From Girardia tigrina (taxonomy: Eukaryota), in assembly GCA_001938485.1 (NCBI GenBank), contig MQRK01233751.1, positions 7,110 to 59,261 of the forward strand: a stretch of DNA of 52,152 nt, read 5' to 3'. The notes under the pieces were generated by a model. The model did no database searches and was not told the origin of the DNA. It saw nothing but the letters and a program-made list of their open reading frames with translations. This document shows positions 6,867 to 43,945 of this stretch, one piece after another. Both the position numbers and the translations under genes were made by a program. The number at the start of each line of letters is the position of its first letter. Within the stretch, counting starts at the first letter, position 1.

Positions 6867-7280
6867 CTAACTTGGTGGATCGATATATGTCCTCCATATA
6901 TCGTGTGACAGTTTTTCTTTCATTTGTTCCAAAATGAGAATTGGTGTCATGCGTCTGGAAAGATTCGTATTAATATTGTATTGTTGTATTGATGTGCTCA
7001 TATATAGGATTTTGTCGCTATAATGCCAAAAAATATCAGACTTGATCAATAATAAGACTTTATCAATAATAAAATAGTGATCAGTACGACCATCAACTTC
7101 AATTGTTGTTTTTAAATCCTTTGATATTTTTTCGAAAATATCAAGTCCAATTTCTTCTACGACTTCCCGTCGAAAGCAATGGTCAGGAAGCTCATCCTTC
7201 TCCATTTTCCCTCCCGGGAATTCCCAACGTGTTGAAAGAAATACCTTGACCATTCTTAAATTGTCTGATATTTTTTCCAT
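6867..7280 (-). pseudogene. DCP2: DCP2-like Nudix exon in a chimeric ORF
   Basis: Perfect Nudix box GGKMEKDELPDHCFRREVVEEIGL (Gx5Ex7REUxEExGU), preceded by STRWEFP and followed by DIFEKISKDLKTTIEVDGRTDHYFIID, collinear with the DCP2 catalytic domain. The 3' part switches to Box A-like (WHYSD) and then module-like sequence. Confidence 0.75.
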
Positions 7281-8000
7281 AATATCACATTCTAAACTTT
7301 AATGAGCTTCTTAATGACATGAATATTATGGCACTAAAGTAAATCAACAAATCGTTCACTGTTAGGAATTTCACTGATTGAAAAAAGCCACATCCGATTG
7401 TTTCGTGTTAAAAATCAGAAAATTTTGAGAACGATTCAAATTTCAAATAAAAAACAAAAATTTCTCTTTTTCTCAATCTCTTTCAATCAATTTTTCTCGA
7501 ATTCTAATTTCAATTTCCAATCGAAATAATTCCGCAAAATTTTTAAATCAGAAAAAACTGCTATGATTTTTCAGAATGCCATTCAAATTGTAACATCTAA
7601 TAATGAAAAAATATTTTTTTTGCTAAACCAGTCTAACAATAATTGTTCCTAAACGCAACATTCATAATTTTGAGCAACATTTTTATTTTAGCTTTGATCT
7701 GAAACTTTCCATTTTTCAACAAATTTTATTGTTTTCACCTGCTCAAATACTTTATAATTTTATAATAAAATTGTGAAAAGAATTGGTTTTTTGTTGATTC
7801 ACATTATTATGGAATTTTTCGGCGTTTGTTTAATCGAATCATTTTGTTTATATTTGAGCGTAAAAAATATTGTTGACAAAAAAAATAATTGCGTGATCGA
7901 GTTTTGTGAATTTAAAAAAAGAAATAATAAAATTATTTTCGGCGCGAAAGGGTTTTTGATTTTTTGCTTGCAATTCGCCATTCTCAATTTTCAAATTTTC

Positions 8001-8226
8001 ATGGAATTACAACAACTTTTCCAGATAACTCCCGCCATTTTGATTAAATTTAAAGTTACTTTCAAAGAAATAATTACGAAAATATTATTGATCAAAAACC
8101 CGACGGATAAATGAGGTATTTAAAATCAAAATAACGACACCGAAACAGTACTGTGTGAGACCGAGCGTTGAATTTGTCTCGCCGCAACAGTCCAAAGAAA
8201 TATCGATCAAACTGCAAATTCAATGA
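8001..8226 (+). pseudogene. VAP (VAMP-associated protein) MSP-domain fragment
   Basis: MELQQLFQITPAILIKFKVTFKEIITKILLIKNPTDK, then a frameshift, then VFKIKITTPKQYCVRPSVEFVSP. This matches the VAP signature FK(V/I)KTT.P..YCVRP. Stop/frameshift at ~8112; no introns. Confidence 0.85.
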
Positions 8227-8880: not shown

Positions 8881-9814
8881 CTTCAATGGAACGATTTTTT
8901 GACAACATTACTTACATGCTTGTTGGTTTTTTATTTGGAATCGCGTGAGCATTCTGATGATTGTACACTTAAATTCAAGGAATACTTTAAAATTCTGTAC
9001 AATGAACTTTTACTTATTCAATTTTTTGGTGGTTTTCCTCATTGGCTTTTCTTTTTTATTGTACGTTTAACCTTTCACACCATTTGATGAATCTGTACAG
9101 TAAATTTTCTGTCGGTTTTTGATGAGACAATAGAGACAACTCGCTCCTATTTCTTGATAATTAAATAATTAGTTTAGTAAATAATTTTTTTGAAAACATT
9201 CACTTGCACAATCTTTCAAAATATTAACTCGTTTTTACCTTTTTGATGACGTTTTAAATTAACTTTCGCGCTTGTAAATTACTGATTCGTATCTATTTTA
9301 AATTAGAGATTAAAACAATCAAGGTGTAAAGAGTAATATATCCGCTTAATTCTTAATAATTATTCCTACATGAATTAATATACAACAATAAAATATCCAA
9401 ATATTTTGCAACACGAATAATTTATTAAAAATAATTTTCATGATTTGAGAATTTCAAATGGAATAAAGGGCTCTCACAATTCCAGATATCGCTGCTCATA
9501 CGTCTGGAATAATTCGCATGAGTATTAATTGCAATTAATTCATAAATAATCACAAATTAATTAATAAATATTCACAAATTAATTCATAAATAATCACAAA
9601 ATAAATAAATTAATTTAGAAAATAGAAAGTAAGAGTAACAATTTTTATTTTTATAAACAATAATATTTACATGGGTTTCGTCACAAGAATATTATTGTCC
9701 TTGATAGAAAAAACAGTAATTATCTGCGTTCATTGGAGGATTATTCGCATTTAAAAATGCCAAACCTGTGTTCTAGAATTTACATAATTAATACGCAATT
9801 ATAATCATTTGTCT

Positions 9815-10689
9815 TCATTCTCTAACCGGTGCTTCTAAATTCAGATCACCATAGATCATCAACTCTTCAAAAACGAGGGAGACCATCAGCCGGTTGATGG
9901 TGTAGTTGATAGTATCACTCGAGGTATCGTCTGAAGTCACGAGAGATCAGCGCGTATTTTATGGCACTAAACCAAATGAATTTACCCATGGGATTATTTC
10001 GGAGGCGATTGACGCCAAATTGAGCATTCGCGGTGATGATGCCCATTGCCGTTCTTCTGGCCTCAACAGCCTCGGCAATGGTATTATTTTTTGGCTTTCT
10101 TTGTAGAATTTTAATACGCGTTCCTTGTGCGGAACACTAGTACTGGCACGCCTGCAAAGATAATGATTAGCTATGCGACACAAATCGAATAAATGGCACT
10201 CACATTTGGACGTATCGCTGCTTGTACGTCTGGAATCATTCACACGAGTATTAATTGGAATAAATAATCAATAATGATCATTACTTGCGTCGTACCATTC
10301 TGCAGTTCATATATTTTCTGAACGGCCAAGTCCCACTGAACTTCATATTCAAATGCTTGCTTCAGTTTTTCTTCTTCTGAAATTGCGGAAAAACGATTTG
10401 ATTTATTTGATGATAAAATATACTTGGACTTACTTTCGAGCACCGCTTGATTCATTGATGTGCCATGAAATACTACGACAGACCTTTTATCAGTTTTTCT
10501 AATTTTGTGACCCGCGTCGGTATGTAGTTGACGTTCTTTATTGTGTTTTCAATTTCGTCTCTACCTTTTATGATACTACACATTTATTAGTTAAAGGAAC
10601 ATTGAAAGAATCAAAACTAACATCTCATCGGGTTGCAGTTGATTTGGTTGTTCTTGCAATTGCACCGCATTGTTTTTCATTTCCTCGAT
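9815..10689 (-). pseudogene. Unknown multi-exon module gene, copy B (best preserved; 6 exons)
   Basis: Manual splicing of 5 GT-AG introns gives IEEMKNNAVQ...IIKGRDEIENTIKNV...KLKQAFEYEVQWDLAVQKIYELQNGTTQTYKQRYVQMRASTSVPHKERVLKFYKE...EAVEARRTAMGII...DTINYTINRLMVSLVFEELMIYGDLNLEAPVRE*. Two small frameshifts are needed. Confidence 0.75.
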
Positions 10690-10751: not shown

Positions 10752-10790
<39 letters not shown>

Positions 10791-11224
10791 CAATATTAAT
10801 ATTATTAATCGGTATCCTTGTGAGTATTGGGAATTTTCTGTACGGATTTCTCATAAACCGATCGGAAATTCACGAAATCAGCGATTGCGATAGAACGAGC
10901 GTTCAGTGTCGATATTCACGTTATCGATATTGCATGGTATTACAGAGGAATGTTTATTACAGATTAAATCAAAAATTTTAATGATTTTATAAAAAAATAC
11001 GTAACAATTTAAAATGTACAATGGCGTTTAAAAAAGCGATCCATATTTATTCCATTTTTTACTTTTTTATAGATAATACTTTTTATAAAATAAAAATTTC
11101 TTAAACCATTTTTAGATGCGTAAAATGATGTATATTTTTTAGTATCTTTTATTAGTCATATATAATTAACTATATATAAATTTACTTTAATATTTTTATT
11201 TTCTCTAATTACATATATAATCCC

Positions 11225-11400
11225 GTTATGGCTATAATGCCATCACATTGCTTCTATTATGGCAGCAAGTTTTCCCGTAGTGTTTTTACCTGGTTGATAA
11301 CGTCTACAAAAAAATTATAATAATGAAAAAACACGAAGGAACCTTAAAAATAACTTTCTAGTATAATATTTCCCAGATTTCCTCACGAATCTGATTCATT
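11225..11400 (-). pseudogene. DCP2: DCP2-like Box A fragment (exons 1-2)
   Basis: EEIWEILY / RYQPGKNTTGKLAAIIEAM*WHY, homologous to 12311-12690, with an internal TGA. Confidence 0.65.
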
Positions 11401-11882
11401 TTATGATAAATAACAATAACAATCCAGTAACAATCTAAAATAACAATCCAAATAACAATATTCAAAATAAGTAAATAAAGAAAAACTCATCAAACTTTTA
11501 ATTTTGAATAAAACAGACAGTATATCATCTTCAGATCATTCAGCTCTTTATGTATTAAAATATTGATTCCTTTTATTGCTTGATGTATAGATACTTTCTG
11601 ATTAGAAGTATCTGCAGTGACAATACGGTATATTCTTGTCTAGCAATTCTTGATCAACCTTCTACAATCAATCAATCAATAATTGTCATTATCATTAAGG
11701 AGCAATTTACCGAGTCTTTATTTATGGTCATCAGACGCTCGTGCTCTATCTTCATCGAATATATCAGGTGGTTGAGCGTGAAGTTCACAATATATCGTGA
11801 TCGTTCAACACCAAATCAAAAGATGGTGTTGCGTAATTACGATACTGGAATCAAATCAATTTACCCTTGATTTCTTAACCCT

Positions 11883-12243: not shown

Positions 12244-12310
12244 TTAAAAATAAGTATAATATTATAATATATATTATAAAAATAAATAATTAATACAATC
12301 GATGGTGTCA

Positions 12311-12690
12311 CTTCTTTACAAGTTTTATTTAAAATTATTGCGTTATTTGCTTCTCCTCATTCCACTGCTTTAACTCATTTTCCCACGAGGTCAAATTTGT
12401 AAATTTATGGCCATATTTTTGAAAAACTGTAAATAAAATAAATTTCGCGTAATGTAAATTAATTTATGCTTACATTTGTGTCCAAATTCCTCTAGTTTGA
12501 TGTGTTGTGAATTCCTATCATCCACATAATTGTCTGTATAATGCCACCACATTGTTTCTATAATGGCACCAAGTTTTTCCAAAGTTTTTTTAGCTGGTTG
12601 ATAACGTCTACAAAAAATTATAATAATGAAAAAACACGAAGGAACCTTAAAAAACTTACTAGTATAATATTTCCCAGATTTCGTCACTAA
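12311..12690 (-). pseudogene. DCP2: DCP2-like Box A/regulatory domain (3 exons)
   Basis: Spliced: DEIWEILY / RYQPAKKTLEKLGAIIETMWWHYTDNYVDDRNSQHIKLEEFGHK / FFQKYGHKFTNLTSWENELKQWNEEKQ..AIILNKTCKE. This aligns to DCP2 LDDLCSRF..FQIELAHWFYLDFY..IRDFAKAVF..WKEYK..GAIILDETLE. A stop forms at the exon 1/2 junction and exon 3 has a deletion. Confidence 0.75.
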
Positions 12691-12762
12691 TCATTTTAAT
12701 ATAAATTTACAATTAAATAATTTAGTAAATTGTGATTTTTTGAACAAAAATGAACATAATAA

Positions 12763-12982: not shown

Positions 12983-14199
12983 AATATATTTTAAAATATC
13001 ATCTTGGTTTTTTTAAAAAAATTGCCGTTGTTTTTTACATTTACTTATAATTAAACAGAATAACTTTCTTCAATTGCTGATAAAATTTTCACAATATTTT
13101 TAACAATAATTTTGACAGGGGTTACACAAAGTTATTTTTATTTTGTTAATTTTAAATTAATTTTTATTTTATATTCGTTATTAAAACTGCTTTGAAAAAG
13201 TAATTAATTATCAAAAAATAACAAAATCAAAATGGTAGAATTATTTCCATGTGTTTTATTGGCACAATATTTATTATTTCTTCAAGTGACCTTTGAAAAG
13301 GACAACAAATTTCACTAATATAAATAAATATTTTAATAAAATTGAAATAAAATTATTATTCTTCTGTTTTGATCGACTCATTTTTCTTCTAAAATAATAT
13401 TTTAAATCAAAGGAATATTTTAAAATTCCAATTTAAAATATTTGATTATCATTCTAATTAATTTTAAAAATTTTCAATTTGATTTCAATTCCAAATAAAT
13501 TTTGAAATGTAATCAGCGAACTCAAATAACTAGCTCCCCGTGAACGAAATTATCTTAAATTTTCTACTTTTTATCCTAATTTAACTATCTTTTCAAATAC
13601 TGTTGCCATGAAAATATTTTCCCACGCGCATCATACAGATTTTTATGAAAAGAAAAAACCATATTGATCATAATCCATAATTGATGCTCATTGCAGATAA
13701 ATATTTAAAAATACAAATCTTTATTTAATTTTAGTAGTTTTTCTTAAAACAAAGTTTCTTACCGCACCGGAGGTATTCGCGCTCATGTGGGACATTTAAT
13801 CATTTAAGGAGCTTTCATCTTCATCATTCTTGGTTAGCGTCATATATGAAGTATCGATCTTCTAGAAATATTTTTCATGATTTGAGAATTTCTATTTTTG
13901 ATAATTTTGAGATTTTCCGAGTCTTTGTAAAGATTACGGTGTTCAGTACATTTATTTATCATATTCTTCGGTTATTTTTTTTGCATTTGTTCGTGATTTT
14001 CTTAATTTTTAAAATTAATGCTGAACCAATCGGTTTAGACAATATATGCAATTTAATTTATGTAAAATTTAATTCAACATATTTTAATTAAATGAAATGG
14101 TGACAGTGAATGGAATTAGATTAAATTCTTTCATTTTTAAGTAATTATCGTTGTGTAATCTTTTGGGAGAGGCAACATACAATATCACTTAATATAACA

Positions 14200-16394: not shown

Positions 16395-18112
16395 TCATTC
16401 TCTTACCGGTTTTCCTTCATTCGGCTGATTTTCTCCATAGATCATCACAAAAAACTGAGGGACATCATCAGCTGGTTGATGGTATAATTGATCCTATCCC
16501 TCGAGGTGTCATCTGAAGTCATGAGAGATCATCACATATTTGGTGGTACTGAACCAAATTAATTTATCCATTGTATTCTGGAGGCGATCGACGCTGAATT
16601 GCGCTATCTTTGTGACGTTCCCCATTGCCATTTTGCTGGCCTCAACGGAACGTTAAGTTCGTTTTCTTTATAGAATTGTAATAAAAGTTCCTTGTGCGGA
16701 ACACTCGTACTGTCACGCCTGCAATGATATACATTATATATGCGACACAAAAAATCAAATAATAATCATTAGTTGTGCCGCGCCATTCTGCAGTTCAGGT
16801 AGTTTCTGAACTGCCAGGTCCCACTGCAGTTCGATTTGGAAACTTTGCAATCTGCTGACCGTCTGTTGAAATTAGAGAAATCGATTTTGATAATTTGATG
16901 ATAAAATATACTTGGACTTACTTCCAATCTGCTGTTCCTTATTATAATTGTCGTAGATATTCTTCGCCAGTTTTCTTTTTATTTCTAGCATTGTAACTTC
17001 CAGGTCAATCGAATGCAGTTTGCCTAATGCCGATGTAATTCGATCTCGGCATTTCACGACTCTGCACATTTATTCGTTAAAGGAACATTGAAGGAATCAA
17101 AATTTAACATGTCATATGAAGGCAGTGGATTTGGTTGTTCCAACTGCCCTGCATTGTGTTCCGTTTCCCCGGTCTAAAATTAAATACAAATTAAAATACA
17201 AATATTAGTAATCGAGAAAATATTTACTTCGATGAAGATATAATGCGCATTAAATTTACGGAAGATCATTTATGCCATTATCTCAACACCCTAGTATATT
17301 TGGTAGACTTAAAAAGTGCATCTCTCTATCGCGCATCTGGAATCATAAGACAAGTCGCGTATTCGCTGACACTGGAATCAAATCAATTTACCAATTTTAA
17401 CTACTTTAATCCCGTATCTGCACAAGGACGCGATTGTGGACATGACTGTCATTCACAATTCAATGCGCTGATCATCACTCTTGTTGGCAAAATGTTCCTC
17501 AATTTCTGTCTTCTGGGGTATTTCCTTGTTGGCGAGCCTGTAAATAAATTGGCAATTTGTACCACACAAACACATTATTCGACACTCACATTTCTTTGAA
17601 TCGCTCCTCATACGTCTGGAATAATTCGTATTAATTTCAATTAGATGGTGAAGTGATCATTATTACCTTCTCTTGTCCGTTTAATTGAAACAGCCTCTCA
17701 CTGATCAAGTCGTACTGTATTTCGTTTTTGAATTTGTCGGCGATAATCTCTTCGTTTGTTGAAGAAAATGATATTTTATGGTGACATATACGTGAATCTA
17801 CTTCCCGACAATGTTTCATTAATGTACGTCTCCGAAAGTTTGCCTCTCCTTTTTTGCAACTCACGGATTGCCTTCACTTTATTGTTACGGTTTAAAAATA
17901 TCAAATATAGCGCTTTCAATTCCTGATTTTGCGGCCTCTACCCTGCACATTTATTCTTTAAAAATAATTCAGGTAAACTAAGCTAACATTTGCAATTCTT
18001 TAATTTTCTTTGGCTTCTTTCGCTTCTTCTTGTTCTGTACCTCTTCAGTCTTATTTTCAAAACCTTGATTATTCGTGCTTTCATCAAATGGATTATTTTC
18101 CTTTTCCCCAGG
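16395..18112 (-). pseudogene. Unknown module gene, copy C, with two tandem diverged modules
   Basis: Module 1 (18112-17230) and module 2 (17173-16395) share exon order and intron boundaries (at|gtta..gtgcag; ttccag|acgta; aaat|gtgagtg; g|gtaaattga). They are joined by a GT-AG intron at ~17174-17227. Stops, frameshifts and a deleted micro-exon in module 2. Confidence 0.7.
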
Positions 18113-18504
18113 CTAAAATCAAATGCAAATTAGAATTTGGCAATATAAAAAAAAACAATTTAAACCATGCCGAATTAAAAAAATAAAACAATTTTATTTG
18201 ATAATATATGAACAAATATAAATTATTTTAGTTTAATAACAATTTTAATTTAGGGTTTTAAACATAAAAACAAAACTTGAATTTCTTTATATCTTCTATT
18301 GTTTTGCTCAATCATTTTTAATAAAATGCCAAGTTTATATTTTACTTATATAATTCTAAGTGTTTCCATTTTTTCTTATTGAGTATATATAATAATATAT
18401 AATATATATAATATACATAAATTATAGATATATAATTAATTAATTAATTAATAATCATAAATTAATTAATAAATAATAACAAATTAATTCAGTCGATGGT
18501 CTCA

Positions 18505-18875
18505 CCTCTGTACGAGTTTTATTCAAAATTATTGCGCGAGCAATGGGAATTTTTCGCTTGCCCTTATTCCACTGCTCTAACACCTTTTTCCAATTGGGCA
18601 AATCTTTAAATTTATGGCGATATTTGTCAAAAACTGTAAAGAAAATAAATTTCGATTAATGTAAATTAATTAAGCTTACATTGTCTTCCAAAGTCCTCTA
18701 GTTTGATGTCTGGTATTTTATAATAATTTGTCAAGGACCATAACATCGTTTCTATAATGGCATAAATACTCCCTTTCTATTTTTTATTTGGTTGATAACG
18801 TCTACAAAAGAATTCGAATAATTAAAAAACACGAATGAACCCTAAAAAACTTACTGATATAATACTTCCAGAATT
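18505..18875 (-). pseudogene. DCP2: DCP2-like Box A fragment
   Basis: Homologous to 12311-12690. Exon 3 reads WKKVLEQWNKGKRKIPIARAIILNKTRTE (cf. DCP2 [25 protein letters not shown]). Confidence 0.7.
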
Positions 18876-19222: not shown

Positions 19223-19580
19223 GGTCTCACCTCTGTACGAGTTTTATTTAAAATTATTGCGCGAGCAGTGGGAGTTTTTCGTTTGTCCTTATTCCACTGC
19301 TCTAACACCTTTTTCCAATTGGGCAAATCTTTTATGGCCATATTTGTCAAAAACTGTAATGAAAATAATTTTCGCTTAATGTAAATAATTTTACGCTTAC
19401 ATTCACTTCTAAAATTCTCTAGTTCGATGATTGAGGAATTCTCTTTCTCTACATAATTGTCGGCATAAATACCACCACATTGTTTCTATTATGGCACTAA
19501 GTTTTTCCAAATTTTGTTTATCTGGTTGATGACGTATACAAAAAATTATAATAATGAAAAAGCACGAAGGAACCTTAAAA
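19223..19580 (-). pseudogene. DCP2: DCP2-like Box A fragment
   Basis: RHQPDKQNLEKLSAIIETMWWY, plus an exon 3 nearly identical to the 18505 copy. Frameshifted. Confidence 0.7.
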
Positions 19581-20884: not shown

Positions 20885-21542
20885 GAAGTATTTCTATTCT
20901 ATCCCCCCTCTCAAGAATCTTGCGCGCGTCCATATATTATCAATATTATTTTATGATTTCAATAAATTTTACCTCGATAAATTTCCATTCTTTCTCGTTA
21001 ACAATTGGCGTATTCTCCCAATTGATTCCTTCCATCGCATGTTCCAATGCCGCTTTCTTATCGCCATTGTTTATTTCCAGTGCCGTGACCCATCTCTTGT
21101 CGAAAAAAAATTGAAAAAAAAGTTAAAAAGTTAATTAAAAGTCAAAATAATAAATACAACTGACAACAATTGATTGGTGGGGGTGCAAAAGAAACCCCAG
21201 CCAAATTCATCATTTATCAAATTTCGATTTAAATAGTATTTTTCAGTTGTTTCAGGCACTAAGGAATGGCTTTGTTATATTGTTCGATTATTAAAAATCA
21301 AAATAATTAATACAACTGACAACAATTGATTAAAACAAATGTTGGGATGGGATTTCTTTTGCAAAAGAAACCCCAGCCTCTACAAACTCCTTAATTATGC
21401 TGGTATCACAAGACTGGATACCAAAATTTTGGATACTAAATTCACGTGATTCGCTTAACAAAGCGAATGGCGTTAAACGCATGCATTAGATGACGACGTT
21501 CCTGCCCTTCTTACATCTTATCCCTATTTACAAACACATCGG

Positions 21543-21587: not shown

Positions 21588-23011
21588 NNNNNNNNNNNNN
21601 NNNNNNNNNNNNNNNNNNNNNNNNNNNNNNNNNNNNNNNNNNNNNNNNNNNNNNNNNNNNNNNNNNNNNNNNNNNNNNNNNNNNNNNNNNNNNNNNNNNN
21701 NNNNNNNNNNNNNNNNNNNNNNNNNNNNNNNNNNNNNNNNNNNNNNNNNNNNNNNNNNNNNNNNNNNNNNNNNNNNNNNNNNNNNNNNNNNNNNNNNNNN
21801 NNNNNNNNNNNNNNNNNNNNNNNNNNNNNNNNNNNNNNNNNNNNNNNNNNNNNNNNNNNNNNNNNNNNNNNNNNNNNNNNNNNNNNNNNNNNNNNNNNNN
21901 NNNNNNNNNATGTTACCTCGATAAATTTCCATTCTTTCTTGTTTTGTGTATTATTACAATCGATTCCTTCTGTCGCTTGTTTCAATGCTTTTTCCTTATT
22001 ACCTTTGTTTCTTTCCAGTTGCTTGACCCATCTCTTGACGATCCTAAATGCGAATATCGTTACACAAAAATTATAAGACAGTGCTATCTTTAAACTGACC
22101 TGGTCAACGGAATCGAATACAAGAAATCCCATTTGTTCATTTTTTACAATCATTAAAATTATATGACCTTTCTCTTGTTGAAGTATTTTTATTCTACCCC
22201 CGTCAAAAATCTTGCGGCGTCCATATATCATCAATATTATTTTGAAATTACAATTATTAATTTTTACCACGATAAATTTCCATTTGTTCTTGTTATCAAT
22301 TGGCTTAAACATAAATAACAAGAAAAAATAAATAAACAAATAAGTTCATTAAAAGTATATGATCTTTTTGTTATTGAAGCATTTTTATTCTACCCCCCTC
22401 AAGAATCTTGCGGGCCTCCATATATTATGAATATTATTTTGAGATTTCAATGAATAAATGTTACCTCGATAAATTTTCATTCTTTCTTATTTTAAATATG
22501 AGTATTCTCCTAATTGATTCCTTCCATCGCAGATGCCAATGCTGCTTTCTTATCGCATTGGTTCTCCAGTTCCTTGACCCATCTCTTGACGATCCTAATA
22601 GGGAATAGTTACGAAAAATTATGAGTTAGTGTTATCATTAAACTGACTTGGTCAACGGAATCCCATATACGAAATCATTGCGGTTGCTGTTTCTATCACA
22701 GTCCTCAATTGATTCCGTCAAATCTATCAATTTAAACCACCCGATCAACTGAATAATAAGATGTCGTTGGTGATGTGAATAACAATCGAGGTAACGCTCA
22801 TCGACCCCTTGACAAAATATTTTAAATACTAAGATTAAAGTTAATTTCGGATAGTAAATAAAAGAAAAGAGCAATTGTTTTTATTTATAGTTAGAGTCAG
22901 CATTCAATCCATGGGTGTCACGTTGTAAACGTCATTTATTAAGGCACAAGAAAATTTTTTGAGAACTTTTGGTAAAGAAATCTATTTCACAAATTCCATG
23001 GGTTTCAATAT

Positions 23012-23057: not shown

Positions 23058-23240
23058 CAATACAATTTATTATTATTATTATTTTGAAATTTCAATTAAT
23101 AAATTTTACCACGATAAATTTCCATTTTTCTTGTTATCAATTATCAATCTCCGAATTGATATCTTTCAGCACGGATGCTAATTCTGCTTTTTTATCGCCA
23201 TTAATTCTCAATTCCTCGACCCATTTCTTGACGATAATAA
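20885..23240 (-). pseudogene. DCP2: Tandem array of five DCP2-like Box B/C-terminal cassettes
   Basis: Units at ~20885-21100, 21915-22120, 22175-22290, 22370-22747 and 23095-23240. The best unit splices to LIGWFKLIDLTESIEDCDRNSNRNDFVYGIPLTK|IVKRWVKELE, matching DCP2 NIEWFSIEKL...KFFMAIPFIRPLRDWL. Confidence 0.7.
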
Positions 23241-23270
23241 ATGCGAATATTAATACACAAAAATTATCGA

Positions 23271-23794: not shown

Positions 23795-24230
23795 GGGGAG
23801 TTGGTCCCTGCCATGAACTTCAATTGTTATAAATAAATCTTCTGATATTTTTTCCTTAATGTCAACACCTATTTCCTCCACCACTTCACGCCTTATGCAA
23901 TCAGTTGCCGTCTCATTCTTCTCACGTTTACCTCCTGGAATTCCCACCGTGTTGACCGGTATCCTTTTACCATTAGCACCTGTGATAAAAGGTCTTTAAT
24001 GGTCTTTGTAGTAACATAATGTCGATTCTAGTATTGATGTGCTCATATATAGGATTTATTTAAATTTAATTAATTAAAATTATAAACTTATTCTTATTCT
24101 TATATTGTGTACCAAACTACTATAGTTCGATGTCTGGTACATTCGCTTAATGGTCTTTGTGGTACAATAACTTAAATTCTAGTTTAGCAGCAATTATTCC
24201 TTTATTTTTGTCTGGTTGATATCGTCTAGA
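23795..24230 (-). pseudogene. DCP2: DCP2-like degenerate Box A exon plus Nudix exon
   Basis: cag|VLMVKGYRSTRWEF(fs)GGKREKNETATDCIRREVVEEIGVDIKEKISEDLFITIEVHGRDQ at 23980-23795 (cf. DCP2 VLLVQGY..SGWGFPKGK..E...DCAAREVFEETGFDIKD). RYQPDKN exon at ~24225. Confidence 0.8.
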
Positions 24231-24931
24231 AAAAATTCGAACTTCCGGAGGTTCTCGTTTTTTTCGAAATCCATTTTTGACTCCGGCAAATCACATATAG
24301 GGAACCACATGATCATCTGAATAATTTAATGTCAATGGTGAATATCAATCGAGGTAACCCTCATGAACCCCTTGACACTATATTTGAAATACCAAGATTA
24401 AAGTTAATTTGGGATAATAAATAAAACAAATGAGGAATTGTTGTCATTTATTGTTAGAATCAGCATCCAATCCGTGGACGTCACGTTAAATATATCATTT
24501 ATTAAGGTTTTAAAGTTTTCGGGAACGTTTATTAAAGAAATCTATTTCACAAATGCCATGGTCTTCTATACCTTTACAAATACAAATGGAGATAGAACAA
24601 ATTCCAATCGAATGATACAAATGTGTGAAATAGGAAAGGAAGAAACGTTTAAAGACTAAATAAAATTGAAAACAGTCATACTTCTTCCATTAAAGCACGG
24701 CAATGAGTGTTATTTGTCATTAATATAACTTTAAGTTGGTGCATGTTGGGAGTTTCAAACACCGAGTGTTATTTAAACCACTATATATAAGCGAGAACAT
24801 TCGTAAAGAAATGTGTAGACTCAAAATTCACTTTAAATATTAATTTTATTAAAGAAGAATTTTGATACCAATAAGTTATAATTTATTCATTACAATCATG
24901 TTTGTCAATGAGGGCGGGCTGTATTTTATAT

Positions 24932-25276
24932 CTACATTACACTAAATAATATTTTAAAAAGTTGTTTGAAGGGTTCAATCAAAATTAAAATACTACATAA
25001 ACATACATCGATCTCTTGTTTTGCGAATGGATGGAACGACGTACTGCAATCGACTTGATCAATAATAAAATAGTGATCATGACGACCATCAACTTCAATT
25101 GTTATTTTTAAATCCTTTGACATTTTTTCCAAAATATCAAGTCCAATTTCTTCTACGACTTCCCGTCGAAGGCAATGGTCGGGAAGCTCATCCTTCTCCA
25201 TTTTCCCTCCCGGGAATTTCCAACGTGTGGAAAGGAATCCATTGATCATTCTTAAATCGTCTGATATTTTTTCCAT
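24932..25276 (-). pseudogene. DCP2: DCP2-like Nudix exon (open frame)
   Basis: STRWKFPGGKMEKDELPDHCLRREVVEEIGLDILEKMSKDLKITIEVDGRHDHYFIIDQVDCSTSFHPFAKQEID, then a gtatgt donor at ~25005. Paralogue of 7060-7340. Confidence 0.8.
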
Positions 25277-28008: not shown

Positions 28009-28653
28009 GTTAATTTTTATTTATGAGATATTTTTGTAAATATGGTATTGCATTTTGACTTTTTCCAAATTAAGTATCAACATTTCCTGCAGAAAAGGTT
28101 TACTTATATGTTTCATGAAATTATTTAGAATAACTTAATTTTTGGATCTCTTCCCAGTCGGTTGAAAAAGACTATTTTAGAACTTTTAGAAATTGTAGTG
28201 GAGATTCTTTTAAATTTCCATTACGACTGTAGTAAGTTCATTAACCATATCTGCTGTCTTCAGGTCTTATTCACACTTTTGTATGAAAATATTTTAAAGT
28301 TTTCATTATCGATTTGATGAGTTTCAAGGTACTTGAAAAATAATTTTATAAAATATTCTGCAAATAAGATCATGGTTTATTTATTAGCAATGAGAAAACA
28401 TAGTTCCGCTTTTATAAGGTTTTAGATTATGTAGGTATTTTAATCAATTTAAAAATTCGCATTGGAGTAAATAAATCATTAAAACACAAAATCATTACTT
28501 TTACAAATAAATTTTTATAAAAACTAACATTAGAACTTGCAAAATTCGGAAGTGGGTTATAAATTTTGCGTATTAGCTACCATAACACAATTAATTCATG
28601 TTTAGGAACTTATAAAAGTTATTTGAGTTTTTAGTTATGTGGCTTCTAGTTCT

Positions 28654-30330: not shown

Positions 30331-31041
30331 TTGTTCTCAATATCAATAAATTTTTAGAGAAGAGACCATACACAGTGTAAAATATATCAAAATGCTCCTA
30401 CGAATAAATAATATATAAAATCCACACAAGAATAATTTAAAAAAAAATTATTTACAGTTTTTTTAAATAACTGACAAGACTTTCGTTCCAACGCATAACA
30501 TTTTCAAAGATTATGATGGCAAAATGTGAGATGTTTCACATAATTTTTCCAAATATATATATGCAGACGTGATAAGGAAAACGGGAATTGAATTCGTTGA
30601 CCGTTAACTGTACCAATAAATGATGTCTTTCATTGATTTTTACTCGAGAAATTTCAATCAATTACTTCTCCCAGTTTAATTTAAATCCAGTTCAATGAAA
30701 TTTTAATTTACATTTTAAGTTCATTTAAAATTTTTATCAATAACGAAAAAAACTTCATGTGGATTAAGACTTACATTTTCTACTTTGATAAAGTTTTAGT
30801 ATAATTTAAATGTAATTATTTTGCATTTCGAAAAATTTGATATTAAGTATTCTAAAAAAATATCCATACTCATTTTTTCACTGAAATTTAATCATTTAAT
30901 GACGGTTTTACTTTGGCTAATTTACGTAAGACTTTATTGGAAGCAGCAAGGTTCGAGTTTATTTTCGAAAAAATGCTCTTTGGAATAAAGATATTTTGAT
31001 ATTTTGTAACTATCGCATTTCTCGATTCACTCGTGTGTTCA

Positions 31042-31946
31042 AAAATACATGTGTTGAAAAAGTATTTGGTGTCTTTCATTCAATGTATACAACGATATTT
31101 CAACGATTTTACCGGATTCTCCAAAGAAAATTTCCATTTTTCAAAGGTATATTGATATTTCTGAGCTAATTGTAGTTCTTTAAATTGTTTGGTCATTTCA
31201 ATTGAGTACACACTTTCACCGAATTTCCATCACTGAATTGAGGCTTCGCTTTAGTTCCTAAGTACTAAGTACCTAAATTTAAAGTTTATTTTCATGTCTT
31301 AGTCGTGTATCTAGTCATCTACTGTTGTTGCTTTGGTATTTATTTCAAGTAAGTTATCATTGTCCTATTCTCATTCATATCTTTATTGGAAGAATTTTCA
31401 ATTATACTTGACCACAATTGAAAACGAAATCTCGATTTCTATTTTTCAAAATGTTTCTATTCAATGTCAATTGTTTGATGATTTCGTTTCTCATTCACTT
31501 CTTTTTCCGACAATCTTTTCAAGATCTTTTGCTGCATTTTTCGAACTTTCTCGAACTAAATATAAATTAGGTAATAATTTAACTCAGGTTTGCACAAATA
31601 TAATTTTCTTCATTTGCTAAATATGAAAATAACTAAATTTTTCCTGAAGGACAGCAAATAATGCTGTTTAGTCTTGAAATATTTTTGATCACTAGAACAC
31701 GAGACATTCACAAGAATTGTGGTAAATCGAGAATATTGAACAAGACAATGTAAAATTCAGTAAAAATAAATTATGTTATTTTATAATCATTTAATTTGTA
31801 TTCTTGATTATATTTTTCATTACACGAAATACGAAAATATATTGGAATAGTCTCAAGAAAACTAAATTTAATCAATAAAAGTACAATATAGCAAATAATG
31901 AAATAAATATTTAATAAACAAACATAAAACCATAAAATATTAAATA
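31042..31946. repeat. ~905-bp direct repeat, copy 2
   Basis: Matches 27104-28008. Confidence 0.95.
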
Positions 31947-32873
31947 TTTAATTTTCATTTATTTAAACACAAATATTTCCTTAATTATCAAATTTAAAAA
32001 ATAATAAAGAAATTCCAAAATTTAACCAATAGTGGAGATTGTTTTGTAAAAAAATGACCCTTTAAAAAAATAATTTTTTAATTAATTAATTTTTTAGGGA
32101 GAATAAGAATTCGGATCCATCAAACTCAACAAGAACCATCAATTTGGTTCAGATTTCACAGTACATGGTTGTGAACCATAAACTCTGTATCACTTAGAAA
32201 TCATAAATAGACAATACAGAGTCTAATGTCAATTTTAAGATATGGGAAAAAACTGTTCAAATTCAAAATGGCTGCAAAATATCTTTTATTGAACTTCGAT
32301 AATTACCTTTAAATGGTGTCATTCGTCCATTGACCCTAGCGACAGTGATTATGCAATACTATTTGTACTTTAATTTAACAATTTAGTAGTAATTTATTTT
32401 TAGTAGTCATAAGACTCAATTTAAAATGTCTTAGCATTTTCTTTAATTTTTATTTAATCCCTGTTATAAATTTGGGGTGCCTTTTCATTCTTTTCTAGAA
32501 TGCAGGCTGACTTCATTAGCAATATATATAGGGTTGTGCATATATTGATATGAAACTTAGGAGACCATCTTTTAATAGCCTGCATTAGTTCTCTGAACCC
32601 TACATTATGTCCTGATCTGTCGCAGTCTAGCTGAATAAGTAAATCGATTATTACCACGAAATACAGACAATAGAAAGTAAGTGACAATTTTTTATTTTCA
32701 AGCGCAATAATATTTAAATGTTTGTCCTCACAAAACATTATTGAATATTATTGTCTTTTTTTGAAATAACAATAACATGTCTCCATGTTTGCTGAAGGTT
32801 TCTTGGCTTTTATAAATGTGACCAAGGTGTTATAGAATTTATATAATTAATACACAATTATAATTATTTGTCT

Positions 32874-33385
32874 TCATTCTCTTACCGGTTCTCCTTCATT
32901 CGTCTGATTTTCTCCATAGATCATCACCTCCTCAAAACTGAGGACATCATCAACGGTTGATGGTATAATTGATCATATCCCTGGAGGCGTCATCTGAAGT
33001 TATGAGAGGTCATCACATATTTGGTGGCAATGAACCAAATTAATTTATCCATTGCATTCTGGAAGCGATTGACGCTGAATTGCGCTACCTTTATGATGTT
33101 TTTCATTGCCGTTTTGCTGGCCTCAACAGCAACGTTAAGTTCGTTTTCTTTATAGAATTGTAATACAATTTCCTTGTGCGGAACACTCGTACTGTCAGGC
33201 GTGCAAAGATATTCATTACATATGCGACACAAATCGAATAAAGGGCTCTCACGTTTCGATATATCGCTCTTCGTACGTCTGGAATAATTCAGAATTAATT
33301 GGGATAAATAATCAAATAATAATCATAACTTGTGCCGCACCATTCTGCAGTTCAAATACTTTCTGAACTGTCAGGTCACACTGCA
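32874..33385 (-). pseudogene. Unknown module gene, copy D (3' half)
   Basis: STSVPHKEIVLQFYKENELNVAVEASKTAMKNIIKVAQFSVNRFQNAM. Closest to module 2 of copy C, and retains the micro-exon that copy C lost. Confidence 0.7.
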
Positions 33386-33584: not shown

Positions 33585-33985
33585 TATCTTTACGAGTTTC
33601 ATTTAAAATTATTGTGTGAGCCGTGGAAATTTTTGCTTCTCCTCATTCCACTGCTTTAAGTCATTTTTCCACGAGGCCAAATTTGTAAATTTATAGCCAT
33701 ATTTTTGAAAAACTGTAAATAAAATAACTTTCGCGTAATGTAAATTAATTAACGCTTACATTTATGTCCAAACTCCTCTAGTTTGATGTGTTTTGGATTC
33801 TTATCATCCACATAATTGTCGCTATAATGCCACAACATTGCTTTTATAATGGCACCAAGTTTTCCCGAAGTGTTTTTATCTGGTTGATAACTTCTAGAAA
33901 AAAAATTATAATAATGAAAAAATACGAAGGACCCTTAAAAAACTTACTCGTATAATATTTCCCAGATTTCCTCATCTGATTCATT
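33585..33985 (-). pseudogene. DCP2: DCP2-like Box A (3 exons)
   Basis: EEIWEILYE / SYQPDKNTSGKLGAIIKAMLWHYSDNYVDDKNPKHIKLEEFGHK / FFQKYGYKFTNLASWKNDLKQWNEEKQ. An extra isolated exon 3 lies at 34395-34500. Confidence 0.75.
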
Positions 33986-36019
33986 TTATAATAAATTTAC
34001 AGTTAAATAATTCAGGTAAATTGTGATTATTTAAACAATTTTTTATTATTTTTATATATTGTTCGGGATTCAAACATTTTTAGGAGTTTTGATGTGCTCA
34101 TAAATTTTTGAATTTAAAATCTAATCAATTTAATAATGAAATAATTACATTTCGCAAAATAGATATACACGTTAAGTTATCGCAAAATTGTAAAGAAAAA
34201 ACTAATTTTATTGTTATAATTCAGTTAGAACTTTTTTTAGAACTAATCATGAATATAACATCGCGTAAATGGCCCCCATTTTCTCTTACACAAAGAGATG
34301 CTCTTTTTAGAGCACTTTCCATCACAACACGCAATGTTTCAGGTTGTAAAAATAATCACAAATTAGTTAATTAACAATCACAGATTAATAAAATCGATGG
34401 TCTCACCTCCTTACGATTTTCAATTAAAATTATTGCGTGAGCCGTGGGAAATTTTTGTTTCTCCTCATTTCACTGCATTAATTCATTTTCCCACGAGAAA
34501 TTTTTTATTTTTACGTCCTTAATGTTAACATAAAAAATTATATAAATATAAACAGTTATTGCCTCGAAAATTTGTAATATTTCGAAGACTCCATGGAACC
34601 TGAAATAAATGACCAAAACGTCTCTCTAAAAATTAACCTGAATGAACTAATAAAACACAATAAAACAGAAGTAGTATAATTATTGGGTAGATAGTTGACT
34701 ACCCAAGGACTCTTGGTATTCTTGGGTTTGATCTATAATTTTCTCCAAATTTTGATAAAAATAGTGAAAAATGGACCAAAATCGATGAATTTTCGATGAT
34801 TTCAATCAAAAATTTGGTAAAATTTTATAAATTTAAACCACAGTTACTTAACGTTTTAAAGGGATTTCGGTAGATATTCTTTAAAATTGTTTTACGACTT
34901 ACAGTATTAATCGTCATCGATGTTTTCGAAGTGAGGACGGGCTTGTTTGATATGTGTCGGTTGTTGATGTATCGTGTTATACCGAAATACCGACTTTTTA
35001 TGGAATCCTTGATATTTTCTCAATCAAAGTCTATAATATTTATTTTGATAGCAGTTCTAAGTTTCAACGTGACAAATTACATGCATAGAAACCCTGTTTA
35101 GTCTAAATAAAGTCTAATTTCCTGATCGTAATGTAAGGTACATTAAGTTAGAAAATCTTTCACAGCATTAGTGTACAGATTTGTGAGCCATAAACTCTGT
35201 ATCATTTAGAAATCATAAATAGACAATACAGAGCCTACTGACAATTTTAAGATTTGGGGAAAAGCTTTTCAAATATAATTTAGGAAACATTTTAAAAATA
35301 AATAATAGGGATTATAGGCCGACCTAGTTTCAAATTTGATATTCGCCGATATTCATTCCCCAAATATTTGAAAGGTTTGAATTAAATCAAACAACGTTGT
35401 ACTATCGGGCAAATTCGAAATAAATTTCACTTTATCCAGCTGGACTTCCATATCAATTTTATTGCAATTATATTTAAAAGTGACTGCAAAATATATTTTA
35501 TTCAAATTCGATAATAACCTTGAAATGGTGTCTGTCTAACTTTTCTTGTTATTCATTCGTCCATTGGTCCTGGCGGCAGTTATTATGTAATATTTTTTGT
35601 ACTTTAATGTAATATTTTAGTAGTCGTAAGACTCATTTTCCAATATTTGCGTCTTAGCATTTTTTAATATTTATAAATTAAAAAATATAAATTTTTTAAA
35701 CATTATAAATTTATGGTGCTTTTTCATCCTTTTCTAGAATGCAGGCCAACTTCATTAGCTTCATTATCTAGGGTTGTACATATATTGCTATAAAACTTAG
35801 GAGACCATGTTTTAATGGTCTACATAGAGCTATATTTACACTTACTTTGAGATTGGGATAACATATTGGAAATCCCAGAGCGTTTTGTTTTTTTGACAGT
35901 CTTAAGTTGAATTTGGTAATTTTTCCTTTACATAATAAATTACATATACATTACCATTATGTTTCTTAAATAAATTTAAATAAATATTTTTCATGGTATT
36001 CTTATTCTTATATTGTGTT

Positions 36020-36295
36020 CATAACTGCTCTAGTTCGATGTTTGGTACATTCGCATTATGGTCTTTGTAGTACCATAACATCGATTCTAGTATTGATGTG
36101 CTCATATATAGGATTTTGTCGCTATAATGCCAAAACATAGCTTCTATTATGGAACAAGTATTCTAGATTTGGTTTCATCTGATTGATAACGTCTAGAAAA
36201 AAATTCGAATAATGAAAAAAACACGAAGAAACCACATAAAAACTTTCTCGTATAATTTTTCCCAGATTTCCTCACTAATCTGATTCCGTTTATGA
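36020..36295 (-). pseudogene. DCP2: DCP2-like Box A fragment
   Basis: RISEEIWEKLYE / RYQSDETKSRILVP*.EAMFWHYSDKI. Homologous to the other Box A copies. Confidence 0.65.
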
Positions 36296-42000: not shown

Positions 42001-42269
42001 AAAGATAACCAATGGAAATCCATCGGTCGCACACGTGTTTGTATTCATGTCTGGTCAATTATGAGAGAGGTTAGAGTCTGTGAGAGCCAACATTCAAACA
42101 ATTATCCTATGCTATGCAATTATCTTAAGTAGAGTTGTACCATATATCAGCTAACACAATATACTGTCTTTTATTATATTTTACACTGACGGGTTGTATT
42201 TTATATGTACAATTAACTAAATAATATTTTTAAAAGGGTTGAATCAGTATTATAAGAAAACATAGATTA

Positions 42270-43945
42270 ACATCGATCTCATTTTTTGCAATTTGACGAA
42301 ACTCTATCGATTTCGACTTGATTAATAATATAATAATAATCGGTACTAGTTTAATCACTATAATAAAAACGAGTTCTATCCACTTCAATTACAATGGATA
42401 AATTATTTAAGAATTTCAATGAATAAATTTTACCTCGATAATTTCCCATTTTTTCTTGTTTATAATGGGAGTATTCTTCCAATCGATTCCTTTAATCGCA
42501 TTTTCCAATGCTATTTTCTTATCGTCATTGTTTTTCGGCAATTCCTTGACCCATCTCTTGACAATCCTAAATGCGAATATTGTTACACAAAAATTATAAG
42601 TCAGTTCTATTTTTCAACTGACTTGGTAAACGCAATTCCATATCTTCATTATATTATTAAATCTCTTATTTTTATTATTTAATTTTACACATAGAGGATT
42701 AGGGTATCTCGTACATGAATCTAAAATTTCAAAAGTCAGCTAAAGAACATCCAGCGAATCGATGACATCAGTCGGGATTTGCTCCTCTATGTGCGTCCAT
42801 GCACCCTGTTTTAGTCGCTGTCTGAGAGCAGCATCGTCAATATAGGAGTGAATCTCACATCAAAATTAATTTTAGTACTGATTTTAGTTCAATTGGAGGG
42901 AAGTCATCTTTATATATATTAATATTTCTTCTTGTATTATTTTTACTTATTACTTATTATTATTAACTACTTATTATTATTTACTTATTATGCACAAATT
43001 ATTATATTATGTACATATTCCACTTCCCGAACTGAGAAGTCTTTTGCCAAATTTGTAAATTTATTGCCATATTTATTAAAAACTGTAAATAAAATAAATT
43101 TCGCTTAATGTAAATAAATTAACGCTTACATAACTAACTGCTCTAGTGTGATGTTTGATAAATTTATTATATTTTTCTTCATATTTTTTATTATTGTATA
43201 ATATTTATGTATTATTATATATATAATATATATTATATTATACAATAAATTATATTTGTGAGGAATATTTTCTAGTGGCTCTTCAGGATGAATTTGGTCT
43301 TGCTACCATAATGAACAAAATTTTCAAAAAAAAACGATAAATAAAGTTTAGAAATAGTCTTAATATTGATAAAAATATTTGATTCACCTCTGACTTTACT
43401 ATAAATCGAACAATTGTCAAATTTTATGACTTTTCTCAGTGAAGTAACAAAGCATATTTATATAGGCTGTTCTGTGTTATTTAGTTTTTATGGAAATGAT
43501 CCAAGAAAACGTTAATAGTCGACACATCTCCAAAGTTCTAGTGTTAAGCAAAGCATATATATGGTTTATTTATGATATTTTGAATCGTTAACGCAAGTTT
43601 TTTCCAATAGAATTAATGTTCTAAAAGTCATATCGATGTTGCTTATAACAATTCTCAATAAAATTCTGATTGTAACTATTTCAGATATTTTTAATCTCCA
43701 AATATTCAAAAATTTGTGAATTCGCCAAATCCTAAATTAAACAAATATATTTGGAGTTCATTAAAAGTATATGATCTTTTTGTTATTGAAGTATTTTTAT
43801 TCTACCCCGTCAAAAATCTTGCGGGCGTCCATATATTATGAATATTATTTAAGAATTTCAATGAATAAATTTTACCTCGATAATTTCCCATTGTTTTGTT
43901 TACAATGGGAGTATTCTTCCAATTGGTCTCTTTAATCGCAATTTT
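42270..43945 (-). pseudogene. DCP2: Out-of-order DCP2-like fragments: Nudix 3' end (42270-42400), Box B (42420-42650), Box A exon 2/3 piece (43020-43160), Box B tail (43750-43945)
   Basis: IEVDRT...YYIINQVE...EID|gt; YGIAFTK|gtcag...tag|IVKRWVKEL; aaactgtaaataaaataaatttcgc intron shared with Box A copies; tail homologous to 22345-22530. Confidence 0.65.

What the first reader, a model, noticed from the sequence alone, without database searches (positions are those of the whole stretch)
6867..43945. Large shuffled archive of divergent DCP2-like decapping-enzyme cassettes
Seen: roughly 20 minus-strand fragments over 37 kb (about 9 Box A, 4-5 Nudix and 7 Box B pieces), with no contiguous intact gene. 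Stitched at shared intron boundaries they give a complete but very divergent core: ...IETMWWHYTDNY...WNEEK.KIP.A.AIILN.T..EVLMVKGY.STRWEFPGGK...REVVEEIG.DI...FAKQEID|LIGWF...FVYGIPLTKIVKRW. Known: DCP2 is normally a single- or low-copy gene. The Box A Trp/Asp cap-binding pair (S. pombe W43/D47), the Nudix glutamates and the downstream general-base Glu all have apparent equivalents here. Inference: this lineage expanded and diversified decapping enzymes. The locus is either a birth-and-death graveyard or a donor archive for mosaic genes. A role in host-mRNA shutoff, analogous to poxvirus D9/D10, is speculative.
Basis: partly seen in the sequence, partly recalled or inferred. Interest (0 to 1): 0.85.

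Follow-up and report, generated by a model that had tools for sequence, protein, structure and literature searches.

The report
Decayed cluster of mini-DCP2 gene fragments

Summary
About 20 minus-strand pieces between 7.0 and 43.1 kb are partial copies, introns included, of a six-exon, roughly 255-aa "mini-DCP2" gene. An apparently intact compact copy lies on other contigs (L007/L013).

The family is DCP2-like. The Nudix exon's 13 best matches among solved structures are all Dcp2. Profiles of the Box A and hinge exons align colinearly to DCP2.

No copy in the window is whole. Nearly all have stops, frameshifts or truncations, and young copies differ as much in exons as in introns.

The reading is therefore a birth-and-death pseudogene cluster. 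It was built by same-orientation segmental duplication and reshaped by recombination; one copy is a clear mosaic. I found no evidence for a working "donor archive" or for host shutoff.

New points:
- Spliced contigs from three public data sets join the DCP2-like exons to the neighbouring "orphan module", so the two form one transcription unit.
- The genome holds at least 84 DCP2-like matches in several subfamilies.
- Between subfamilies, exons diverge about twice as fast as introns. This is unexplained.
- The long-range order is uncertain: another contig joins 21.3 kb directly to 47.1 kb.

The parts
43010..43131 (-). Intron 2 plus the 5' 59% of exon e3 (hinge). Diverged and truncated.
42471..42572 (-). 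Exon e6 (Box B tail, IVKRW...). Open frame, acceptor AG kept, isolated from the other exons.
42268..42344 (-). 3' 30% of Nudix exon e4, with a 2-nt deletion and a stop.
36116..36280 (-). Exon e1 plus the 5' 58% of Box A exon e2. Indels and two stops.
34401..34528 (-). Lone exon e3, with a stop and indels.
33587..33988 (-). e1-e3 block. e1 has indels, e2 is intact (33754-33899, W...D pair kept), and e3 has a 1-nt deletion (frameshift). Exons of the orphan module follow only about 200 nt downstream.
25007..25255 (-). Full-length Nudix exon e4 with an open frame and a canonical Nudix box (G-x5-E-x7-REVVEE-x-G). The ancestral acceptor AG is replaced. An ATG at 25276 opens the frame.
24178..24322 (-). 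5' 78% of exon e5, fused directly to a 5' fragment of exon e2. This chimeric junction ends in a stop at about 24192.
23811..23985 (-). 5' 68% of Nudix exon e4, with a 1-nt deletion (frameshift).
23154..23242 (-). Exon e6 copy. Acceptor changed to AT, indels present.
22502..22754 (-). Exon e5 intact with AG/GT (22642-22754), a 43-nt intron, then exon e6 (22502-22598) with a 3-nt deletion and a late stop.
21948..22156 (-). 3' 60% of e5 (frameshifted) plus an e6 that is 97% identical to the reference copy L007. The piece lies 39 nt from the gap at 21588-21909.
21010..21103 (-). Exon e6 copy (80% to L007).
19225..19541 (-). e2 (1-nt insertion causing a frameshift, acceptor TAT) plus e3 (5-nt deletion). 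92% identical to L007. e1 was not found before the gap at 19639.
18500..18807 (-). e2 (stop, 12 nt of indels) plus an intact e3. This is a mosaic copy: its 5' half is 71-83% identical to every other copy and its 3' half is 94-98% identical.
12308..12699 (-). e1 intact, e2 intact (IETMWWHYTD), e3 with a 13-nt deletion (frameshift).
11198..11403 (-). e1 (6-nt insertion) plus the 5' 72% of e2, with a stop inside the Trp motif.
7062..7254 (-). 5' 78% of Nudix exon e4, with a canonical Nudix box. The same truncation point occurs on three other contigs.
16407..17174 (-). Five exons of the 'orphan module' X. In spliced contigs these lie downstream of the DCP2-like exons. Further sets lie at 9723-10338 and 32886-33383, and one exon at 13789-13863.

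Best explanation
The region is a birth-and-death cluster of non-functional partial duplicates of a lineage-specific gene.

The gene: its ancestral form has six short exons and encodes a compact, roughly 255-aa DCP2-like protein (Box A helix, hinge, Nudix domain, Box B). In some members, further exons follow that encode an orphan C-terminal module 'X'.

Shown here:
- The pieces keep their introns, so they arose by DNA-level duplication and not by retroposition.
- All pieces lie in one orientation inside larger repeated blocks, as unequal crossing-over or segmental duplication produces.
- Nearly every copy carries stops, frameshifts, lost splice sites or truncations.
- At least one copy is a recombinant between an old and a young lineage.
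- Recently separated copies differ as much in exons as in non-coding DNA, as expected for neutral decay.

Inferred:
- The window itself makes no decapping enzyme. At most it yields spliced non-coding or pseudogene transcripts, like those seen for near relatives in public data.
- Any functional members of the family lie elsewhere in the genome.
For: - Reference copy L007/L013 has e1-e6 with GT-AG introns of 42-701 nt and open exons.
- Window pieces align to it across exons and introns.
- All internal repeats of at least 200 nt are direct.
- Blocks of the window recur at 92-99.9% identity on contigs C245933, C219766, C215201 and C233618, with identical truncation points.
- The mosaic copy at 18.8 kb is shown.
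- Within-clade exon and non-coding divergence are equal, for example 7.1 vs 7.0% and 4.9 vs 4.4%.
- NG86 omega is 0.6-2.9 for the youngest e4 pairs.
- DCP2 identity: PF00293 E = 2.7e-10. The top 13 solved structures are all Dcp2. hhalign places e2 on the Box A helix (93%, E = 2.8e-7) and e3 on the hinge/beta1 (86.5%, E = 4.5e-6), colinearly.
- Spliced contigs L019, L020 and L073 join e2-e6 to the X exons and carry the same e4 deletion/frameshift in three data sets.
- Other loci (L018, L021, L074) show the same shuffling and stops.
Against: - A few exons are perfectly open and keep every catalytic residue (e4 at 25.2 and 7.2 kb; e2 at 12.6 and 33.8 kb; e3 at 18.6 kb; e5 at 22.7 kb).
- Both e4 copies share an upstream ATG, so a short Nudix-only product cannot be excluded.
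- Between subfamilies, exons diverge about twice as fast as introns. Simple neutral decay does not predict this.
- Expression of the window's own copies could not be tested. The only run that holds the window is of uncertain kind and is kept as contigs.
Confidence: 0.75

Rival explanations
1. Functional donor archive. The broken cassettes would serve as gene-conversion donors that diversify one or more expressed mini-DCP2 genes, in the manner of trypanosome VSG or chicken Ig pseudo-V arrays.
For: - One copy is a clear mosaic.
- Identity to the reference switches block-wise between 72% and 98% along single copies.
- Exon diversity exceeds intron diversity in 40 of 45 copy pairs.
- All cassettes share one orientation.
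Against: - The clear mosaic is itself a pseudogene.
- No intact acceptor gene lies in or next to the window.
- Many cassettes are truncated inside exons or fused out of order (for example e5 to e2 at 24.2 kb).
- Such mosaics are the ordinary by-product of recombination in any tandem family.
Confidence: 0.07
2. Assembly artefact. The apparent shuffling over 37 kb would come largely from mis-scaffolding or chimeric contigs of a short-read assembly of similar paralogues or haplotypes.
For: - The assembly has 255,254 contigs.
- All gaps sit at (TA)n repeats.
- Contig C245933 is colinear with window 3.9-21.3 kb and then jumps to 47.15 kb at 99.9% identity, skipping about 26 kb.
- Nothing bridges the gap at 21588-21909.
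Against: - The gap-free block 21910-49197 alone holds about 13 out-of-order pieces.
- Independent contigs of a public run match stretches of it without any difference, for example 23690-24200.
- A metagenome contig (L021) and other loci (L018) show the same kind of disorder.
- The stops and frameshifts lie inside contiguous sequence.
Confidence: 0.08
3. Regulatory pseudogene array. The same-strand cluster would be transcribed and spliced as long non-coding or read-through RNA, and would act through small RNAs (piRNA-cluster-like) or as a decoy on the active members of the family.
For: - Near-identical spliced contigs of a frameshifted relative occur in three data sets.
- One of them runs from the end of an X module into the next DCP2-like unit.
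- The cassettes have a uniform orientation.
Against: - No small-RNA or strand-specific data could be examined.
- Uniform orientation is explained by tandem duplication alone.
- The transcripts are sense, not antisense.
Confidence: 0.06
4. Arrays of alternative exons, with mutually exclusive splicing as in Dscam. One Box A, one Nudix and one Box B cassette would be chosen per transcript.
For: Read on the minus strand, the pieces form rough runs: e1-e3 blocks at 36-33 kb, then e4 copies, then e5/e6 copies at 24-21 kb, then e1-e3 blocks again at 19.5-11 kb.
Against: - Only 2 of 7 e2 copies and 1 of 6 e3 copies are open.
- Several copies have lost their acceptor or donor sites.
- Exons are truncated internally.
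Confidence: 0.02

Closest known systems
Canonical eukaryotic Dcp2 (S. pombe and S. cerevisiae Dcp2, human DCP2/NUDT20)
   Same: - The parts come in the same order: Box A helix with a Trp...Asp pair, hinge with an IP..aIIL strand, Nudix box, Glu-Ile..Trp-Phe loop, and a Box B-like F-x-Y-x-I-P-L..(I/V)..W segment.
- Solved Dcp2 chains are the 13 best matches of the Nudix exon.
   Different: - The protein is only about 255 aa, with a short Box A (PF05026 scores 21 bits, below the 28-bit cut-off).
- It is present in dozens of copies instead of one.
- Most copies are broken.
- Some open copies have altered catalytic glutamates: L007 has RDVVKE and L012 has REVIEG.
- Some members carry an unrelated orphan C-terminal module.
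Viral Nudix decapping enzymes (vaccinia D9/D10, ASFV g5R, mimivirus L375)
   Same: Small stand-alone Nudix decapping proteins of about 250 aa, present as paralogues in some viruses (from my own knowledge; titles of the relevant papers were seen).
   Different: - They have no Box A (from my own knowledge).
- The only sequence link is an approximately 31% match of the Nudix part of another subfamily to giant-virus contigs.
- The window's copies have host-like short GT-AG introns.
Birth-and-death multigene families whose exons outrun their introns (snake-venom PLA2, conotoxins; MHC class I introns homogenised by recombination)
   Same: - Tandem or segmental duplication, many pseudogenes and mosaic copies.
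- Exon divergence is about twice intron divergence.
   Different: - Here synonymous and non-synonymous changes are both raised.
- Omega is about 0.3-1.5, not clearly above 1.
- No secreted or immune function is known.
- The comparison with these families rests on my own knowledge, not on a test.

Membership tests
Dcp2 family (Box A + Nudix + Box B decapping enzymes) | Nudix domain with the box G-x5-E-x7-R-E-U-x-E-E-x-G-U | tested here: met
   - Window e4 at 25007-25255 scores PF00293 E = 2.7e-10 (40.8 bits, cut-off 21.1).
- Direct reading gives a complete box in the 25.2-kb and 7.2-kb copies.
- The 23.9-kb and 42.3-kb copies are frameshifted or truncated.
Dcp2 family (Box A + Nudix + Box B decapping enzymes) | The Nudix domain is closer to Dcp2 than to other Nudix families | tested here: met
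   phmmer of the reference e4 against all solved structures ranks Dcp2 chains in the 13 best places (E = 7e-9 to 1.4e-5). MutT-type hydrolases follow from 1.4e-5.
Dcp2 family (Box A + Nudix + Box B decapping enzymes) | N-terminal Box A domain (PF05026) with the cap-binding Trp/Asp pair | tested here: inconclusive
   - PF05026 scores 21.4 bits (E = 3e-4), below the 28-bit cut-off.
- A profile of e2 alone finds no solved structure.
- hhalign puts e2 on the Box A helix of a DCP2 alignment at 93% probability, E = 2.8e-7.
- The W-x3-D pair is present in the open e2 copies.
Dcp2 family (Box A + Nudix + Box B decapping enzymes) | Hinge and first strand (K..IP..GAIIL), colinear between Box A and the Nudix domain | tested here: met
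   hhalign places the e3 profile on columns 84-110 of the DCP2 alignment, downstream of the e2 match (86.5%, E = 4.5e-6).
Dcp2 family (Box A + Nudix + Box B decapping enzymes) | Catalytic-loop Glu (NEI..I.WF) and Box B helix after the Nudix fold | tested here: inconclusive
   - By eye only: e4 ends in ..QEID and e5 starts LIGWF, matching the invariant E, I, W and F columns of alignment A3.
- e5/e6 read F-V-Y-x-I-P-L-T-R-I-V-K-R-W, like the Box B segments of P0004 and P0012.
Dcp2 family (Box A + Nudix + Box B decapping enzymes) | One gene in this window encodes all the domains in an open frame | tested here: not met
   No window copy has all exons. All e1-e3 blocks have at least one broken exon, and e4 copies lack their partners. 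This feature is met only on other contigs (L007/L013).
Dcp2 family (Box A + Nudix + Box B decapping enzymes) | m7GpppN-mRNA hydrolase activity | not testable with these tools
   Needs recombinant protein and a cap-labelled RNA assay.
Processed (retro-) pseudogenes | Introns are lacking | tested here: not met
   The window pieces keep introns 1, 2, 4 and 5, at 84-97% identity to the reference gene.
Gene-conversion donor arrays (VSG or Ig pseudo-V type) | An expressed acceptor gene receives tracts from silent cassettes | tested here: inconclusive
   A recombinant tract is seen, but in a pseudogene. No acceptor lies in the window, and the expressed relatives seen (L019, L073) are themselves frameshifted.

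The most novel reading that the evidence does not exclude
The mini-DCP2 radiation would be an arms-race family. Cap-binding and decapping proteins, or catalytically altered pseudo-enzymes, would be kept diverse in their exons while recombination homogenises their introns. The transcribed, spliced pseudogene arrays such as this window would take part, either as conversion donors or as sources of regulatory RNA. Targets could be transposon or viral RNAs, or the differently capped (spliced-leader) mRNAs of flatworms.
Probability: 0.12. Interest if true: 0.8.

Novelty: new variant of a known kind. Interest (0 to 1): 0.5.

Why it matters
From my own knowledge, DCP2 is the catalytic core of general mRNA decapping and is single-copy in the model eukaryotes. 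Here there are at least 84 matches genome-wide, in several subfamilies: intron-bearing, intronless, catalytically intact and catalytically altered.

I found no description of this in four full-text searches.

If some members are active, this organism would offer a natural panel of decapping enzymes. They might differ in substrate, for example between m7G and trimethylguanosine caps on trans-spliced mRNAs, or have conflict-related roles.

The excess of exon over intron divergence is a pattern otherwise known from venom and immune genes.

The window itself matters mainly as evidence of the turnover rate of this family. It is also a caution for annotators: gene predictors will call many short false 'Nudix' proteins here.

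Tried and rejected
- Profiles of the Box A exon (A1) and the hinge exon (A2) against all solved structures found no Dcp2 hit; the exons are too short.
- A metagenome scan with the spliced product P0008 found no relatives.
- A viral-contig scan with an intronless mini-DCP2 gave only about 31% matches in giant-virus MAGs, so a viral origin is not supported.
- The ESM Atlas and Pfam gave nothing for the orphan module X.
- The representative library of 1.84 billion proteins returned only short fragments (46-157 aa) as close relatives of the window's Nudix exon, and no full-length annotated protein.
- The look-up of sequencing runs returned no run on record as RNA. The one holder is kept as contigs, covers coding and non-coding bins alike, and gives no verdict on expression of the window's copies. 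One of its contigs appears to lack the 43-nt intron between e5 and e6 of a copy at least 90% similar. I read this from one joint only and do not rely on it.
- TE-mediated capture of gene fragments (Helitron or Pack-MULE type) was considered. No element termini were looked for systematically. The pieces sit in larger duplicated blocks, which makes capture unnecessary.
- The 83-column tree separates four clades: the window family, Group I with the L004 type, Group II, and canonical DCP2. It cannot order them. The window exon's position next to the outgroup is a long-branch effect.
Full report
**What the window is.** The window is AT-rich (20-39% G+C). It lies on contig C233751 of a 1.43-Gb assembly of 255,254 contigs. 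Introns of 42-53 nt with GT-AG ends show that it is eukaryotic.

**Checking the observation.**
- ORF listing and tblastn with the window's own pieces found many minus-strand matches to Box A, hinge, Nudix and tail peptides.
- Searching the whole assembly with single exons led to a compact copy on contig C161790 (L007). Contig C53050 (L013) overlaps it with identical e4, e5 and e6 (100% blastn matches) and carries the gene further downstream. Exons e1-e6 lie in order within 2 kb, each is open, and each is flanked by AG/GT. The gene would encode about 255 aa.
- Laid against this reference, the window holds 16 DNA matches of 70-92% identity that run through introns.
- An exon-by-exon inventory gives nine e1-e3 blocks, four e4 pieces and seven e5/e6 pieces.
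- Defects: stops at 36.2, 34.5, 18.8, 11.3 and 42.3 kb. Frameshifting indels at 33.6, 23.9, 19.5, 19.3 and 12.4 kb. Changed splice sites at 25.26, 23.24 and 19.54 kb. Internal truncations at 7.06, 24.24, 22.1, 36.1 and 43.0 kb. An e5-to-e2 fusion at 24.2 kb.
- A handful of exons are perfectly open: e4 at 25.2 kb, and also at 7.2 kb as far as that truncated copy goes; e2 at 12.6 and 33.8 kb; e3 at 18.6 kb; e5 at 22.7 kb.
- No gene is whole.

**The gaps.** All four N runs border (TA)n repeats, and no cassette spans one. Paralogous contigs align to both flanks of the gaps at 16001, 19030 and 19639 in the same order. Nothing bridges 21588-21909. Contig C245933 is colinear with window 3.9-21.3 kb at 92-99.7% identity and then continues at window 47.15 kb at 99.9%. 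The 26-kb block holding most Nudix and Box B pieces is therefore either haplotype- or copy-specific, or wrongly scaffolded. The gap-free block 21910-49197 is shuffled on its own. Contigs of a public run match parts of it exactly. I did not fill any gap.

**What family it is.**
- The Nudix exon passes Pfam NUDIX.
- The reference copy's Nudix exon (L007 e4) has solved Dcp2 chains as its 13 best matches.
- The Box A exon alone is below Pfam's cut-off (21.4 vs 28 bits), and its profile finds no solved structure.
- Profile-profile comparison places e2 on the Box A helix and e3 on the hinge and first strand of a DCP2 alignment, colinearly.
- The Trp...Asp pair, the full Nudix box and the ..QEID|LIGWF loop are readable in the open copies.
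The family is DCP2-like.

**How the cluster arose.**
- Introns are retained, so the copies are not retrocopies.
- All internal repeats of at least 200 nt are direct. They form a recurring unit: a 5' flank, e1-e3, the orphan module X, and a spacer.
- Blocks of the window recur on at least four other contigs at 92-99.9% identity. The recurrence includes the same truncation of e4 at nucleotide 198. Already-broken pieces were therefore copied as parts of larger segments.
- The 18.8-kb copy is a recombinant. Its 5' half is 71-83% identical to every other copy and its 3' half is 94-98% identical.
- Young copy pairs differ equally in exons and non-coding DNA, with omega near 1. This is neutral decay.

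**A new link.** The nearest proteins in 1.84 billion representatives are short fragments. One of them, P0008, is encoded on intron-less contigs with 39% G+C from two JGI samples and one SRA run (L019, L020, L073). The genome matches these contigs only exon by exon, so they are spliced RNA of a relative at up to 93% identity. They join e2-e6 to further exons that map onto the 'orphan module' in the window (13.8, 17.2-16.4, 10.3-9.7 and 33.4-32.9 kb). L073 starts with the end of one X module and runs into the next unit. All three contigs share a deletion/frameshift in e4, so they are transcribed pseudogenes. X also exists as an intact intronless 194-aa ORF elsewhere (L022), without any recognisable family.

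**The wider family.** A canonical DCP2 query matches at least 84 places in the genome, and the window's Nudix exon matches at least 87. Subfamilies:
- The window's intron-bearing type.
- Group I: intronless Box A + Nudix ORFs of 130-283 aa, with a G-x5-D-x8-RExxEE box.
- A 256-aa type with a degenerate box, present in at least six copies that give identical Box A scores (36.5 bits).
- Group II: Nudix-only tandem arrays.

These rest. The 83-column tree separates them from canonical DCP2 but cannot order them. I found no paper describing this expansion.

**An unexplained pattern.** Between subfamilies, exons are about twice as diverged as the adjoining introns and flanks: 16.2% vs 9.0% over ten alignments that are not independent of each other. 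The excess holds at A/T and G/C sites and at all codon positions. Exon divergence exceeds non-coding divergence in 40 of 45 copy pairs. Omega is about 0.6-1.5 in the Box A exon and 0.3-0.9 in e3 and e4. Possible causes are introns homogenised by conversion while exon differences are kept, venom-like accelerated exon evolution, or a mutational effect. I cannot tell which.

**Verdict.** The window is a decaying, recombining pseudogene cluster and not a working archive. Its value is that it exposes an undescribed radiation of small DCP2-like genes. As required, I searched the spliced model exon by exon and left out the joined step.

Noticed in passing
L022:2585-3169 (-) = G000:C222971: The orphan module X exists as an intact, intronless 194-aa ORF next to a Tc1-like transposase fragment. 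It has no Pfam family and no usable ESM Atlas hit.
   Followed up: partly
L073 (Logan contig of SRR32618891), L019 and L020 (JGI samples 3300081876 and 3300081718): These spliced contigs (about 39% G+C) are 99.6% identical to each other. They run from the end of one X module into the next DCP2-like unit plus X, which suggests read-through transcription of tandem units. All share the same deletion/frameshift in the Nudix exon.
   Followed up: partly
L004:67-834 (+) and identical-scoring places on C11351, C14285, C22949, C88590 and C225569: An intronless 256-aa Box A + Nudix ORF occurs in at least six copies that give identical Box A scores (36.5 bits). Its Nudix box is degenerate (RHFYEK in place of RExxEE), so it may be a pseudo-enzyme.
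   Followed up: partly
L028-L047 (for example C235125, C220738, C238543, C227288): Group I comprises many intronless mini-DCP2 ORFs of 130-283 aa whose Nudix box has one extra residue (G-x5-D-x8-RExxEE). Two copies lie in inverted orientation 27 kb apart on C220738. I could not fetch the contig to see whether they mark the ends of an element.
   Followed up: partly
L054, L063 (C220687, C220688): Group II comprises tandem arrays of Nudix-only open frames with a canonical box (GKIENGE...REGxEELG) and about 620-nt spacing.
   Followed up: no
window 27100-28024 and 31038-31962: Two 925-nt direct repeats are 99.7% identical and 3.9 kb apart. I saw no TG..CA ends or target-site duplication. This could be a recent tandem duplication or a non-autonomous LTR-like element.
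   Followed up: partly
window 44891-45298 (-): A fragment of a piggyBac-type transposase (PF13843, E = 5e-17) lies just beyond the cluster.
   Followed up: no
window 21320-47149 compared with G000:C245933: Contig C245933 is colinear with the window on both sides of this stretch but lacks these 26 kb. It carries its own e5/e6 and spacer pieces at another place. This is a structural polymorphism, a recent duplication or a scaffolding difference.
   Followed up: partly
L007:2180-2335 (intron 4 of the reference gene; window about 24.7-24.9 kb): A segment of about 150 nt within intron 4 recurs at about 75% identity on more than 15 unrelated contigs. It is probably a small dispersed repeat.
   Followed up: no
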